This document shows positions 2,418-44,100 of a DNA stretch of 64,000 nucleotides, piece after piece. The position numbers and the translations under genes are program-made. The DNA lies in the NCBI GenBank assembly GCA_003427395.1, contig BFEA01000025.1:4906224-4970223 (forward strand), given 5' to 3'. The DNA comes from Chara braunii (Eukaryota > Plantae > Charophyceae). How positions within the stretch are numbered: position 1 is the stretch's first letter; each line of letters opens with the position of its first letter. Under the pieces are notes generated by a model, which was not told where the DNA came from, did no database searches, and saw only the letters and a list, made by a program, of their open reading frames with translations.

Positions 2418-2470
2418 TAGCATGGCCTCTGTACAAAGATGACACACATAAATCGAGAAACAGTCCAAGT
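2418..2470 (+). pseudogene. U6: 5'-truncated U6 retrocopy with A-rich tail
   Basis: tagcatggcctctgtacaaagatgacacacataaatcgagaaacagtccaa followed by aaaaaaggaacaaaaaaa. Confidence 0.8.
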
Positions 2471-2565
2471 ATAAAAAAGGAACAAAAAAACACAACAGCT
2501 TGCCAAGAAGGCGGGCGAGAGCGAGCCAGCGGGAGTGAGCACGAGGGATCGATAGGGCGGTGCTC

Positions 2566-38100: not shown

Positions 38101-41100
38101 NNNNNNNNNNNNNNNNNNNNNNNNNNNNNNNNNNNNNNNNNNNNNNNNNNNNNNNNNNNNNNNNNNNNNNNNNNNNNNNNNNNNNNNNNNNNNNNNNNNN
38201 NNNNNNNNNNNNNNNNNNNNNNNNNNNNNNNNNNNNNNNNNNNNNNNNNNNNNNNNNNNNNNNNNNNNNNNNNNNNNNNNNNNNNNNNNNNNNNNNNNNN
38301 NNNNNNNNNNNNNNNNNNNNNNNNNNNNNNNNNNNNNNNNNNNNNNNNNNNNNNNNNNNNNNNNNNNNNNNNNNNNNNNNNNNNNNNNNNNNNNNNNNNN
38401 NNNNNNNNNNNNNNNNNNNNNNNNNNNNNNNNNNNNNNNNNNNNNNNNNNNNNNNNNNNNNNNNNNNNNNNNNNNNNNNNNNNNNNNNNNNNNNNNNNNN
38501 NNNNNNNNNNNNNNNNNNNNNNNNNNNNNNNNNNNNNNNNNNNNNNNNNNNNNNNNNNNNNNNNNNNNNNNNNNNNNNNNNNNNNNNNNNNNNNNNNNNN
38601 NNNNNNNNNNNNNNNNNNNNNNNNNNNNNNNNNNNNNNNNNNNNNNNNNNNNNNNNNNNNNNNNNNNNNNNNNNNNNNNNNNNNNNNNNNNNNNNNNNNN
38701 NNNNNNNNNNNNNNNNNNNNNNNNNNNNNNNNNNNNNNNNNNNNNNNNNNNNNNNNNNNNNNNNNNNNNNNNNNNNNNNNNNNNNNNNNNNNNNNNNNNN
38801 NNNNNNNNNNNNNNNNNNNNNNNNNNNNNNNNNNNNNNNNNTATTCACCAAATGTAGAAAATGAGAGTGAATCTTCTGCTAGAACGTGGAAAGGTGCACT
38901 CCCATCATTTTTGTCTTTTGTGCATTTGGTTAGTGCGGCGAGGTCCAGTATCTAGAATTTCTGGCTGCATCCAACACAACGTTGCTTGACATGATGTCTT
39001 CCCCACACTTGTGCTTGACATGTTTGCGTCTGATTTCGTTTGGTGCTTTGCCTTTCTATGATGTGTCTGACTGAATAAGATAAAAGCTGTAAGGTGTATG
39101 GTTTCTCTTCATGTGTGATCAAGTATAGAATGCCATTCTGTGTGAATGCATGAAAGGTTCTTAGGAAACAAACACCTTTGTTAGTGTGGTGTCCATGAGC
39201 TCAAATGTGCAGGTGTGAGTTGGAGCTGTATGGCTGACACTTGGCTTTGTTTATGGTTTCTAAAGCAGAGACTGGCGCTAGGAGCGACGGGAGCGAATGC
39301 TGTGGGACTGGGCATGAACTCAGTCATGCCGGGAATGCCATCGATGTCCAGCATGATGTCAGGGATGTCAGGAATGTCCGGGTTGATTCCTGGTATGATG
39401 GCTAGCATGTCCAGCATGGTGGCCAGTATGAATCCAGTTGCCGTAAATAATCATGCGGCCCAACCGACTTCTGCTGCCGAGGTTCCGACAAGAGTTGTGT
39501 GCCTTGTTCAGGTAGGATGCCCTGATTCGAAAAGCCTTCACGGGGGTGGGTGGTGATTTCACAAATTTTCGCAGTGGTCTGAGAAATCGGTCTGCGGAGC
39601 ACATCTTCAGTCTAGCAAGTGGGTTCCGTTGCTTGAATTTCCCTTCGCCTTCATATATATATATATGCAAATGGTTGTGTTGTGGCCGTCCATCTCCGCA
39701 GTGTAATTTATAGCCCTGCCTAGAAGAATGTGTATGAATCAGTGCTAGGCCGGCAACCGGCCGGTTGAGCTACCGCGGTGCAACCGGAGCTGGACCAGAC
39801 CAGGGGGGGTGAACCGGGAAACCGGTTTTGAAAAAAAAGTGCCCAAATATCTTCTTTTTTTTTCCTTGGGCAGATTCCGACTGCGCTCTTCAAGAGCTGT
39901 CCGAATCCGCAATAAAATTTTTAAGGTACAACATTTTTCAGGGGGCTTCGAGAGGGGGGCAGGGGGTTATCATTGACACATTCAGGCAACTACGGCTTCC
40001 TCAGGGAGCGGTCAAGTAAGCAAGTTCACTTATCCGCCCCCCCGGTCGCTGGAGCACTTCGTGGAGTAGGTCATTTGATATTGATACCCCACCAGCTGAA
40101 CCAGATATGATGAGAGGAGGTCCTTGCCCGAAATTATAGCTCTTCCAGAGTATATTTCGACAGCAGAAAAGTTATGGTTCCAGCTTTCTGCTCGTGGAGG
40201 CAGAGCGTTTTCTGTTTGTTGGTTCCTACATAAGGTGAGTTGTCAGTCCGGAAGTATCTTGTCTGGCATTCTGTCCAGATACATGTAGTGGAGCAAGGTC
40301 CATTCGAGATAGATAGATAGAAGAATATAGCTTAAAAAAAAAGAATTAAAAAAAAAAGATAGAAGAATATGGGCCTCGCTGCACTACTCTCGAAATGTGC
40401 AAAAAGAGAGTGAATCTTCCGCTAGAATTCGGAAAGATACACCACGGCTCTGAAATCACAATTCCAAAATCAACCCATAACTTTTTTCCACAGATGGCAG
40501 GGACGTCGCAGAAGGATATAATCTCAGCAGAGCCTCATCAGAAGCATAGTGTTCCCCTCGTGGCTGAGGGTGAAAGAGCATCAGATGTTGCCAATGGTAA
40601 CTGGTCCATTGGACAACAAGATGACAAATTGGATTAGGGGCCTACCTGACCCACATCTTAGGAAAAACGCATGGGTGTTCTCCGCTGCTGATCTGCATAG
40701 ATCAGCGGCGGATATCGTCTGCCCGTTTTTCTTATAGAAATGGGGTCCTGGCCGATCTTTGCCGTTGATCTGCAACGATCGGCGGCCAAGATTGGCCACT
40801 TTCTGTACTTGAAAAATCCGGGCCTACAGGACCCGGTTTCGAAATTGCGGGGCAGGTACCGCCCCCACGAGGCCTTGGGAACACATACTCGCCGACAAAA
40901 AAAAAATTCAGCCCCCAGCGAATATGCGCTGGGGGCAACCGGGAGGGAACCGGCCCGGGCCACCGGCCGGTCCAACCGGAAGGACCGCGGATGCGGTAGG
41001 GGTCCCCGGTCCATCCGGCGACCAGCCCTGGTATGAATAGGATTCTTTGCCTGTGTAATTTTGTCTTCTTAATCATCTGTTTAATCGTCTGTTTAATCAT

Positions 41101-44100
41101 CTGTTTAATCGTCTGTTTAATCGTCTGTTTAATCGTCTGTTTAATAGACTGTTTAATCTCATCGCTTGTGACCTTTTACCTTGGTTGTTTTGTCCTTAGG
41201 CAACTCCATTACTAGTCTCTATTCCAGTTTGCCCACTCGATGGCCTTGTCTGGTATGTTGGTGGTGGTGCTCTCAAGCATTCATAATTTCATAGGGAGTG
41301 TTTCTGTGGCCATGCTGATGCGAAAAAAGGGACACAGGATTGTGCATCATGTACTACCGTCTTCACCCGAAAGTAAGGCCCGGGCGCTGTGTGCGAACGC
41401 CCGCCGGGCGTTATATTTGTTTATAACGCCCGGGTGTTATAGTCACTAAATTTGTGGCAACTTCGGTGAGGCCCCAGAATTCCAAAAAAAAAAAAAAACG
41501 AAAAATTCTTTAAAAAAAATAAGTGGTCCAGGATTGCAATGCGACCAACTTTTGGCTGAGGGTCACTTCAGAATTCCTTATAAACTCGGAAATAAAAAGT
41601 AAAAACAAAAAATCATGCCGAAATATACCCCATTCGACCCTCTTCAAAACCCATGTATACCCCCTTCGCCGCCCTTTAAAACCCATGTATACCCTCTTCA
41701 AGGTATTCTGCCCATGGAACATTCAAATATAACGCCGGGCGTTCTATTGGAATATAATCCCCGGGCGTTCTGTTTGAATATAACGCCCAGGCGTTCTATT
41801 CAAAGGCGCGTTCTATTTGAAGGGGTGAGGAATAGTGAGTAAAAACGAGAATTAGGGTAAGTTGAATACAAGGCACGGGCGTTATTGTCGGGTGAAGACG
41901 GTAGCAGTCGGTATGATTGTGGTATTTTTGCTGACGGCTTCCTATCGATGTGAATTGTAGGTGGTTACTCCAGAAGAGCTTAAAGACGATGAAGAGTATG
42001 AGGACATCATGGAAGATATGCGGGAAGAGTGTGGGAAATATGGTAAGTGCTGCTCTGGTTCGTGGTGGGTCTCAGCTGTCGGAGTGATTTGAAAAGATAG
42101 CAAACTCAACATGTTGAGAATTGTCTCGACTCGAAGGTCCAGTTTTTGCTTTGGCTCTGGCGCAGCTCGTTTCTGTGGAAATACCGGATTCCGTTGTGGG
42201 TCTCAGCTGTTGGACGTCCGGGCGCAACTCAGAACTTCAGAACATATGCTATGCTTGGTCTTAGCCAAATGGCTGAGAAATGTATGTTGAAATTTGAATG
42301 TTGTTTTACACTGTGCACGCACAACGATATCGTAAACAGATTTCGTTGAACAATCTGATGATGCTGAATAGTACCTTGTGAGGCACACTCTTCATCGGGA
42401 AACATGAGGTGAGCGATTCACTTTCTGATATATTTATTTTTGTATTGTTGCTGGCAAATGCAGGAACGCTTACAGATTTGGTAATACCTCGGCCAAGCTC
42501 TACAGGAGAGGAAACGGCTGGACTGGGAAAGGTGAGCTAGTAGTTAAAAAGTAATAAACACAATTGCTGGACATTATTCCTATCTTGGTTTGGTCACTTT
42601 GCGCTGTGATATGTGTTATCAACTTATCAGTCAACATGCGGTGAAGGGTACAAGGGTCGTGATGGGAATTCATGAGATCACCAAATAAACTGAACTCATT
42701 TTCAGGACCGCTGTTAAAATTGCAACAACGCAAAGAAAGTTTGGCATGGCCTTGCGCAAGGATGATGACACACACGAATCGAGAATTGGTTGAAATATGC
42801 GTAAATAAATAAATAACTTAAAATAAGTAGTATGCTAGGCTACCAGCTGGGCCGCCCGGGTCCCCGGTGGCCAGCCCGTGCAAGGACCAGGGAAGATCCC
42901 AGCAAAAAGAAAAAAAAAAAGAAAAAGAAAAGGATCCAAAAAATCTGAAAAAAAAACTATGTTATGCTGAAAAATAAACTGAACAACTTTTGCCTCAGGG
43001 TCACATCGAAATTCTTCACCAAATTTAAAATTAGAAAAAAAAACAAATTTAAAAATAGTTTGTATTTTTTTAAATTTTTATTTTTTAATTTGTTTTGGCC
43101 TGGCCGGGCAAGTGACCCCGGGCCACTCTGGTAGCTTAGGTAGTATGCATAATAAATAAGTTAAGTAAAATACAAAGAAGTTTAGCATGGCCTTTGCGCA
43201 AGGATGACACACAAACCGACAATTAGTCCAGATAAGAATAAAGAATAATTAAAAAAAAATAAACCGATGAAGCAAGCTTAAGTAACTGCAAAATCGCGAA
43301 ATGAGTTTGTCGGGTACATTCCGGACGGTCATTATTTATGGGAGGTATAGAGTCAATGGTTTGGCTGTTGTAAAACACCCATTTTGTATTCACTAACTCG
43401 GAAAGAATTCCTAAACCAACATGTGTTCCACGGAAAGGCTAGGTAGGGTGGAAAAGGAGCACAGAATGAAAGATGGAGTGAAGGGGACAAGCAGGACAGG
43501 ACATCTATCATAAGGGAAGCAGAAATTGTAGACGGGGCAGGAGGAAAATATGAAACAGAAGTCCTTCAGCACATCTGTTAAAATTCGAAGGTTACGGAGA
43601 AGTTTATCATGACCCCTGCACAAGGATGACGTGCAGAATTTGAGAAATGGTCCAGAAGAAGAAGAAGAAGAAGAAGAAGAAGAAGAAGAAGAAGAAAAGA
43701 GAGAGAGAGAGAGAGAGAGAGAGAGAGAGAGAGAGAGAGAGAGAGAGAGAGAGAGAGAGAGAGAGTGGAGATCGCAGGGCTGTAAACGAGGGCAGGGAGG
43801 CAAAGGTGAGTCACGGATTGTCATTCGTTGCTTTACTCGAGCAGGAACATGCCTGTGTGCACGAGCACATCTGGACCCACACTAGCTTGCACAAATATGC
43901 AGAAATATTTGGGAGCCTTTGCAGGCGTGCACAAAAATGGGTAATTTTGAAATGGGTGAATGGCATCCTCAGGAAACGCTTTGAAATTTGAGCCCTTGAT
44001 TGGGAAGGTGATCTGTTGTAACTTGCATCTGTGCGCAATGTGGCTTTCGAGTTGGCGTGTGCACAGTCACAACGGCATACGTCAGTACTACCCCTGATTG

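What the first reader, a model, noticed from the sequence alone, without database searches (positions are those of the whole stretch)
2418..43655. Five U6 snRNA-derived retrocopies in 64 kb: candidate U6-derived SINE family
Seen: U6 matches at 2418-2470, 18772-18869, 42697-42797, 43170-43232 and 43561-43655. All are on +, all have A-rich or simple-repeat tails in place of the Pol III oligo-T, two are 5'-truncated and one has a 14-bp TSD. Three copies share GAAG-T-TT where U6 has GAAG-A-TT; two share CTGTTAAAATT; two share an A replacing G in the ACAGAGA box. Known: LINE machinery makes U6 retropseudogenes, and snRNA-derived SINEs are rare (U1/U2-derived SINEU in crocodilians). Inference: this density plus shared variants points to amplification from master copies other than the functional U6 gene, i.e. 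a SINE family.
Basis: partly seen in the sequence, partly recalled or inferred. Interest (0 to 1): 0.85.

Follow-up and report, generated by a model that had tools for sequence, protein, structure and literature searches.

The report
Abundant dead U6 copies in Chara
The stonewort alga Chara braunii is littered with tens of thousands of dead DNA copies of the splicing RNA U6, far more than mammals have, but the five copies here look like one-off reverse-transcribed copies of the normal RNA (two of them a local duplicate), not a self-spreading jumping-gene family.

Summary
All five U6 matches are real. The genome is Chara braunii; four copies lie in introns of the U2AF65 gene. The evidence offered for a SINE does not hold. 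CTGTT is CpG decay. The ACAAAGA change and two of three GAAG-T-TT copies come from c3 and c4, neighbours 59 nt apart before a MITE inserted and most likely one insertion duplicated locally. The T is rare elsewhere (1/16 copies; at most 8-16% of genome-wide contig depth). c1 is internally deleted, not 5'-truncated. With 19 further copies from 362 kb of other Chara DNA, the tree is a star around unmutated U6; only local neighbours pair. Density is high (about 50 per Mb, roughly 40-100 times mammals), so this window is ordinary for Chara. Best reading: mass LINE-type retroposition of oligoadenylated U6 (U2 and U5 too). Two leads remain outside the window: one variant lineage sharing three insertions across unlinked loci, and U2/U5 copies sitting next to or around U6 copies (p about 0.002). 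The scan noted dense U6 copies on other Chara DNA many times before (378 notes).

The parts
2406..2470 (+). c1: U6 retrocopy with intact 5' end (2406-2416) and internal deletion of U6 nt 12-43; A-rich tail 2471-2497; no TSD found
18772..18869 (+). c2: full-length U6 retrocopy, about 90% identical to Chara U6, G-run plus A tail 18870-18887, exact 14-bp TSD at 18758-18771 and 18888-18901; sense in a U2AF65 intron
42697..42797 (+). c3: old full-length U6 retrocopy (about 80% identity), 165 nt after the exon ending at 42531; A-rich tail to 42826
42835..43139 (.). hAT-type MITE (12-bp terminal inverted repeats, 8-bp TSD at 42827-42834 and 43140-43147) inserted between c3 and c4; second copy at 36254-36530
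43170..43234 (+). c4: U6 nt 32-96, shares five non-CpG changes with c3; probable local tandem duplicate; A tail to 43258; weak 11-bp TSD candidate around the c3+c4 pair (42683-42693, 43257-43267)
43561..43654 (+). c5: old full-length U6 retrocopy (about 82% identity) followed by (AAG)n and (AG)n; no TSD found; its private letters are absent from 88-98% of other laid copies
42229..42285 (-). weak U2 snRNA 5' fragment in the previous intron, about 410 nt from c3
   Evidence: E 0.03; blastn E 6e-4 to a Chara U2 copy
11021..44923 (+). host gene U2AF65 (exons include 17725-17868, 28633-28749, 34019-34117, 41962-42042, 42464-42531, 44786-44923); c2 to c5 lie in its introns; 5' limit approximate
   Evidence: exons examined one by one, not joined

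Best explanation
These are processed pseudogenes of the ordinary U6 snRNA. SHOWN: each copy matches U6, lacks its promoter and terminator, ends in an A-rich tail, young copies have 14-17-bp TSDs, and copies radiate star-like from the unmutated Chara U6. INFERRED: a LINE reverse transcriptase/endonuclease that accepts any A-tailed RNA primes on oligoadenylated U6 at a nick (target-primed reverse transcription), each time from the functional RNA. The copy is dead on arrival and decays, fastest at CpG. Four events are present: c1 (with a 32-nt internal deletion), c2, c5, and one insertion later duplicated in tandem (c3, c4) and split by a MITE. The process runs far more often, or copies are lost far more slowly, than in mammals, and also copies U2 and U5.
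For: Star tree of 18 copies with CpG masked: only local neighbours pair. No significant excess of shared non-CpG changes among 20 independent copies (36 against 27.7, p 0.07). Each window copy with a full tree row is nearest to the unmutated copy. Contigs laid on c4/c5 show the canonical letter at A43 in 84-99% of depth and at c5's private non-CpG sites in 88-98%, in a set biased towards c4/c5-like copies. Their loose ends read canonical U6 upstream and poly-A straight after the U6 end, with no shared LINE tail. U2 and U5, which have no internal promoter, show the same TSD and poly-A hallmarks. No B-box, USE or TATA at a U6 start (pattern search). LINE-type RT remnants occur in L006, L007, L012. 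The class is described in PMC4476161.
Against: About 90 columns give little power: c3+c4+c5 as one clade is not rejected (p-AU 0.42). G52A (not CpG) is in 6 of 23 copies including c2 and c5, and G73A is in 10 of 21 while C72T is rare in the sample; these may mark source alleles. One clear variant lineage exists elsewhere. The mobilising element was not identified; Penelope-like elements are also abundant in Chara (PMC8557442). The c3+c4 TSD is weak (4% of random sites score as well).
Confidence: 0.72

Rival explanations
1. A true U6-derived SINE: retrocopies became sources themselves and these five belong to such subfamilies.
For: Copy number is SINE-like (about 50 per Mb). L007:11311 and the L011 pair, on different scaffolds with unrelated flanks, share three insertions absent from U6. 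A human U6 variant with an internal promoter is on record (Tichelaar 1994, cited in PMC5855946).
Against: The window's shared letters are explained by CpG decay and one local duplication. A43T is in 1 of 16 outside copies. No internal promoter found, no LINE tail, no RNA read at 95% or more identity to c4/c5 in 901 Mb of oligo-dT reads (a weak test for a 100-nt RNA). None of the five carries the L007/L011 insertions.
Confidence: 0.1
2. Several U6 genes with their own upstream promoters, some of them variant or defective, act as fixed masters (like BC1 for rodent ID elements, from memory). Most copies come from the normal genes, a minority from variants; c2 and c5 may share a G52A source allele.
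For: G52A 6/23 (per-site p 0.0008, about 0.07 after 80 sites). The variant-lineage copies begin exactly at U6 +1, as expected from a real U6 start site.
Against: No promoter-bearing Chara U6 gene was retrieved, normal or variant. G52A does not nest with other changes. Insertions after ACAGAGA differ between copies and may recur by slippage.
Confidence: 0.3
3. Insertion is tied to the spliceosome or to local hot spots: the reverse transcriptase meets U6, U2 and U5 on nascent pre-mRNA and copies them into nearby DNA, which would explain adjacent and nested snRNA copies.
For: 3 of 6 U2/U5 copies lie within 105 nt of a U6 copy, 4 within 500 nt (p 0.002 and 0.001 by within-locus shuffling). A young U6 sits inside a young U5 copy. 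Only U2, U5 and U6 were seen, no U1 or U4 at gathering score. Density is lower in the three transposon-only loci (1 in 85 kb).
Against: The null does not exclude young LTR DNA, which dilutes old insertions. A-rich tails and Sm sites are ordinary LINE targets. Both orientations occur in introns (L007 has 2 sense and 4 antisense). Six copies only, and the pattern was noticed after seeing the data.
Confidence: 0.15

Closest known systems
Poly(A)-class U6 snRNA processed pseudogenes of mammals (Doucet et al. 2015, PMC4476161)
   Same: U6 body, A tail, variable TSD, no promoter, other snRNAs copied too; tailless copies primed internally also occur (L007:11311).
   Different: Scale: 253-2,849 hits per mammalian genome against 28-52 per Mb here; a streptophyte alga; no U6-LINE chimera in my sample of 24; frequent indels at the ACAGAGA edge.
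SINEU of crocodilians (Kojima 2015, PMC4494074)
   Same: snRNA-derived, poly-A tailed, no known internal promoter.
   Different: SINEU has U1/U2 heads and is defined by structures shared among copies (fusions, an internal deletion). The five copies share no such structure; c1's deletion was seen once.
Single-gene-master families such as rodent ID from BC1 (from memory, not tested)
   Same: A Pol III RNA gene serving as fixed master for very many copies.
   Different: ID copies carry internal A/B boxes; no B-box was found in or after these copies.

Membership tests
U6 processed pseudogene, poly(A) class | U6 sequence followed by an A-rich tail | tested here: met
U6 processed pseudogene, poly(A) class | variable-length TSD | tested here: met
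   c2 14 bp exact; L010 17 bp, L011 15 bp; none found for the older c1 and c5
U6 processed pseudogene, poly(A) class | loss of upstream promoter and oligo-T terminator | tested here: met
   (pattern search; the Chara promoter itself was not retrieved)
U6 processed pseudogene, poly(A) class | independent descent from the functional RNA (star phylogeny) | tested here: met
   low power, c3+c4+c5 clade not formally rejected
SINE (general) | high interspersed copy number with TPRT hallmarks | tested here: met
SINE (general) | family consensus distinct from the parent gene, shared by these copies | tested here: not met
   met only for a separate lineage (L007:11311, L011)
SINE (general) | internal promoter carried in the copy | tested here: not met
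   no B-box pattern in the bodies or 300 nt downstream; function not assayed
SINE (general) | unique body or LINE-derived 3' tail | tested here: not met
   loose ends of laid contigs are poly-A right after U6
SINE (general) | copies transcribed as their own small RNA | tested here: inconclusive
   no read at 95% or more to c4/c5, no shared starts, but oligo-dT library and 6% of one run
SINEU | U1- or U2-derived head | tested here: not met
   all five are U6
SINEU | structural change shared among dispersed copies | tested here: not met
   c1's deletion found in none of 8 other 5'-incomplete copies; genome-wide not testable here

The most novel reading that the evidence does not exclude
Chara braunii holds U6-derived lineages that amplify from non-functional masters (a first U6-headed SINE-like family, in the plant lineage), and/or its retroposition of U2, U5 and U6 is tied to the spliceosome so that copies pile up next to each other in introns. 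The L007/L011 lineage and the nested U6-in-U5 copy would be the visible signs; the five window copies would be background or old members.
Probability: 0.25. Interest if true: 0.72.

Novelty: new variant of a known kind. Interest (0 to 1): 0.4.

Why it matters
U6 retrocopies are used as markers of LINE activity in mammals, where they number in the hundreds to low thousands. A plant-lineage genome with probably tens of thousands is a natural experiment on how host RNAs are recruited for retroposition and on the step from retropseudogene to SINE. I found no paper reporting it (the 2018 genome paper was not available). It also matters in practice: annotated Chara U6 'genes' will nearly all be dead, which affects choice of a U6 promoter for editing. 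The window itself shows no new element.

Tried and rejected
CHG methylation as cause of the ACAAAGA change: rejected, CHG sites decay no faster than background (5.3%). Window as an unusual cluster: rejected, 3.3 copies expected, P(5 or more) 0.23. Sense-strand bias in introns: not seen outside the window. Functional U6 gene among the five: rejected (no promoter or terminator, damaged ACAGAGA or AGC motifs in c1, c3, c4, c5). Truncated or odd 5' stem as a family mark: rejected, the 4-bp stem with a TTCG loop is the normal Chara form and occurs in intact U6 genes of other eukaryotes. U6-LINE chimeras: none in 24 copies; the LINE piece next to L007:45891 is on the other strand across a gap. Metagenome scan gave no Chara copies. 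Two last locus look-ups gave no DNA.
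Full report
Observation. Rfam finds U6 at 18772-18872 (82.8 bits), 43561-43661 (59.0), 43133-43237 (47.6), 42692-42800 (34.4) and 2414-2474 (34.2), all on +. I call them c2, c5, c4, c3, c1. A profile of the five finds no sixth. Tails are A-rich or simple repeats, none has oligo-T. c2 has an exact 14-bp TSD.

Context. Earlier notes named the genome as Chara braunii; I confirmed it: all six relatives of an ORF at 61273-62130 are C. braunii proteins. The host gene is U2AF65 on +: the exon at 28633-28749 matches human U2AF65 (E 2e-9), and a homolog maps in order from 21086 to 44919. 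c2 is in an early intron; c3, c4 and c5 are in the last intron (42532-44785). Exons were examined one at a time; the joined step was left out.

Gaps. No copy touches a gap. Exon order is kept across 38012-38841. Right of the gap at 5439-6028 lies a 38-nt palindrome at 6063-6100 that I recognise from memory as the Nextera mate-pair junction; the same string is in three other loci. So c1's link to the rest is unproven. This does not affect any copy-level result.

More copies. I fetched ten Chara loci chosen by unrelated proteins (L001-L003, L006-L012; 362 kb without N). They hold 19 U6 copies, 10 of them above Rfam's gathering score: 52 per Mb (locus bootstrap 30-73), or 28 per Mb on the strict count. 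Seven loci are gene-containing; the three transposon-only loci hold 1 in 85 kb. With an assembly of about 1.4 Gb (from memory) this gives roughly 15,000-75,000 copies. Summed contig depth on c5's 5' part is about 1,450-2,100 times single-copy depth; the tool warns that this is not a copy number, and it counts only copies that align to a diverged query. The window's five copies are ordinary for Chara (3.3 expected, P 0.23). L007:45799-45891 is the consensus of the set with all CpGs intact, and served as the U6 reference; its 5' 75 nt differ from two intact U6 genes of other eukaryotes at one or two sites.

The shared variants, numbered on Chara U6. (1) CTGTT is C16T in a CpG. CpG bases show 22.5% transitions against about 5% elsewhere; C16T is in 4 of 16 copies and its mirror G17A in 4 of 16. 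(2) G37A is in c3, c4 and one outside copy. (3) A43T is in c3, c4, c5 and 1 of 16 outside copies. Among contigs laid on c4 and c5, the canonical A holds 84-99% of depth although the set is biased towards T. c3 and c4 share five non-CpG changes (G37A, A43T, C56T, T76C, A87T; p 0.008), more than any other window pair. A hAT-type MITE with an 8-bp TSD sits between them; without it they are 59 nt apart. An 11-bp direct repeat with one mismatch flanks the pair, though 4% of random sites do as well. The window has many two-copy tandem duplications. I infer one insertion duplicated locally. c5 then shares only A43T with c3, as chance gives about half the time (p 0.5), and its private letters are absent from 88-98% of laid depth.

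Tree. With CpG columns removed, 18 copies form a star on the unmutated copy. The three forks above 80% support are all local neighbours: c3+c4, the L011 pair (a 589-bp local duplication) and an L008 pair. None reaches the strict threshold, and a c3+c4+c5 clade is neither shown nor rejected (p-AU 0.42). c1 was too short for the tree.

c1. U6 nt 1-11 sit directly before its body (10/11; chance 2e-4), so it lost nt 12-43 between two GA repeats. No other 5'-incomplete copy has this junction.

Mechanism. Young copies have 14-17-bp TSDs and poly-A; one TSD begins at a TT/AAAA site. Loose ends of laid contigs read poly-A directly after the U6 end. U2 and U5 are copied the same way. LINE-type RT remnants are in three loci. 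This fits target-primed reverse transcription of oligoadenylated snRNA, the second model of PMC4476161. The enzyme is inferred, not identified; Penelope-like Chlamys elements are abundant in Chara (PMC8557442). No B-box, USE-like or TATA pattern sits at any U6 start. In 901 Mb of oligo-dT reads none of 41 laid reads reached 95% identity to c4/c5 and no shared start was seen; one contig of a run guessed to be RNA spans the stretch, as intron RNA or DNA would.

What survives of the SINE idea. L007:11311 and the L011 copies lie on different scaffolds with unrelated flanks, yet share insertions at three places: in the AAAA run near nt 21, nine letters after the ACAGAG, and four letters at nt 64. 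The L007 copy has its own TSD, starts at +1 and has only about 3-4 substitutions. That needs a transcribed template other than normal U6. Whether it is a promoter-bearing variant gene or a self-copying element is open. G52A (6/23, c2 and c5 included) may mark a source allele.

Two further patterns. Six of about 19 indel events, counted by hand, break at nt 39-44 (p 0.0008), including a 6-nt insertion in a copy with one substitution and a perfect TSD. Human U6 is 2'-O-methylated at the matching A47 (PMC5855946), so RT stalling is a candidate; DNA slippage in the AG run is the rival. And U2/U5 copies lie next to U6 copies more than chance within each locus (distances 0, 35, 105, 414, 1156, 3902 nt; p 0.002). 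Both were noticed after seeing the data.

Verdict. Real copies, real and unusual genome-wide abundance, but no SINE shown for these five. I found no paper on U6 amplification in Chara or on a U6-derived SINE. The scan has noted the abundance many times on other Chara DNA; those notes are leads, not support.

Noticed in passing
L010:8698-8965: Young U6 retrocopy (+, 17-bp TSD) inserted at the Sm site of a young poly-A U5 retrocopy (-, 14-bp TSD).
   Followed up: partly
L007:11311-11700: Tailless variant U6 with five short insertions, then 35 nt later a full-length U2 retrocopy with its own TSD and several short duplications. The insertion after the ACAGAGA box resembles the 5' end of plant U1 (from memory; 8 nt, may be chance).
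   Followed up: partly
L011:4689-4999: Very young U6 copy with a 6-nt insertion at the ACAGAGA edge, followed about 100 nt later by a 3'-truncated poly-A U2 copy.
   Followed up: partly
window:6063-6100: Mate-pair junction adapter left in the assembly next to the gap; also in L006, L009 and L011.
   Followed up: partly
window:29828-29883: Type III hammerhead match on - (39.9 bits, below gathering score) in a U2AF65 intron.
   Followed up: no
window:17959-18083: Decayed duplicate (84%) of the U2AF65 exon at 17725-17868.
   Followed up: no
window:9729-9861, 12429-12958, 14491-14639, 19396-19527: Dispersed hairpin-forming MITE-like family that gives false microRNA hits in Rfam.
   Followed up: no
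L001:21940-22052: 3' half of U6 followed directly by an antisense tRNA-like B-box stretch.
   Followed up: no
window:60358-62130: Broken Chara-specific transposon ORFs on -; relatives in L001 and L003 lie beside transposase-like frames.
   Followed up: no
window:18870-18878: G-run between U6 end and poly-A in c2; the L007 U2 copy also has a G-rich stretch before its A tail.
   Followed up: no
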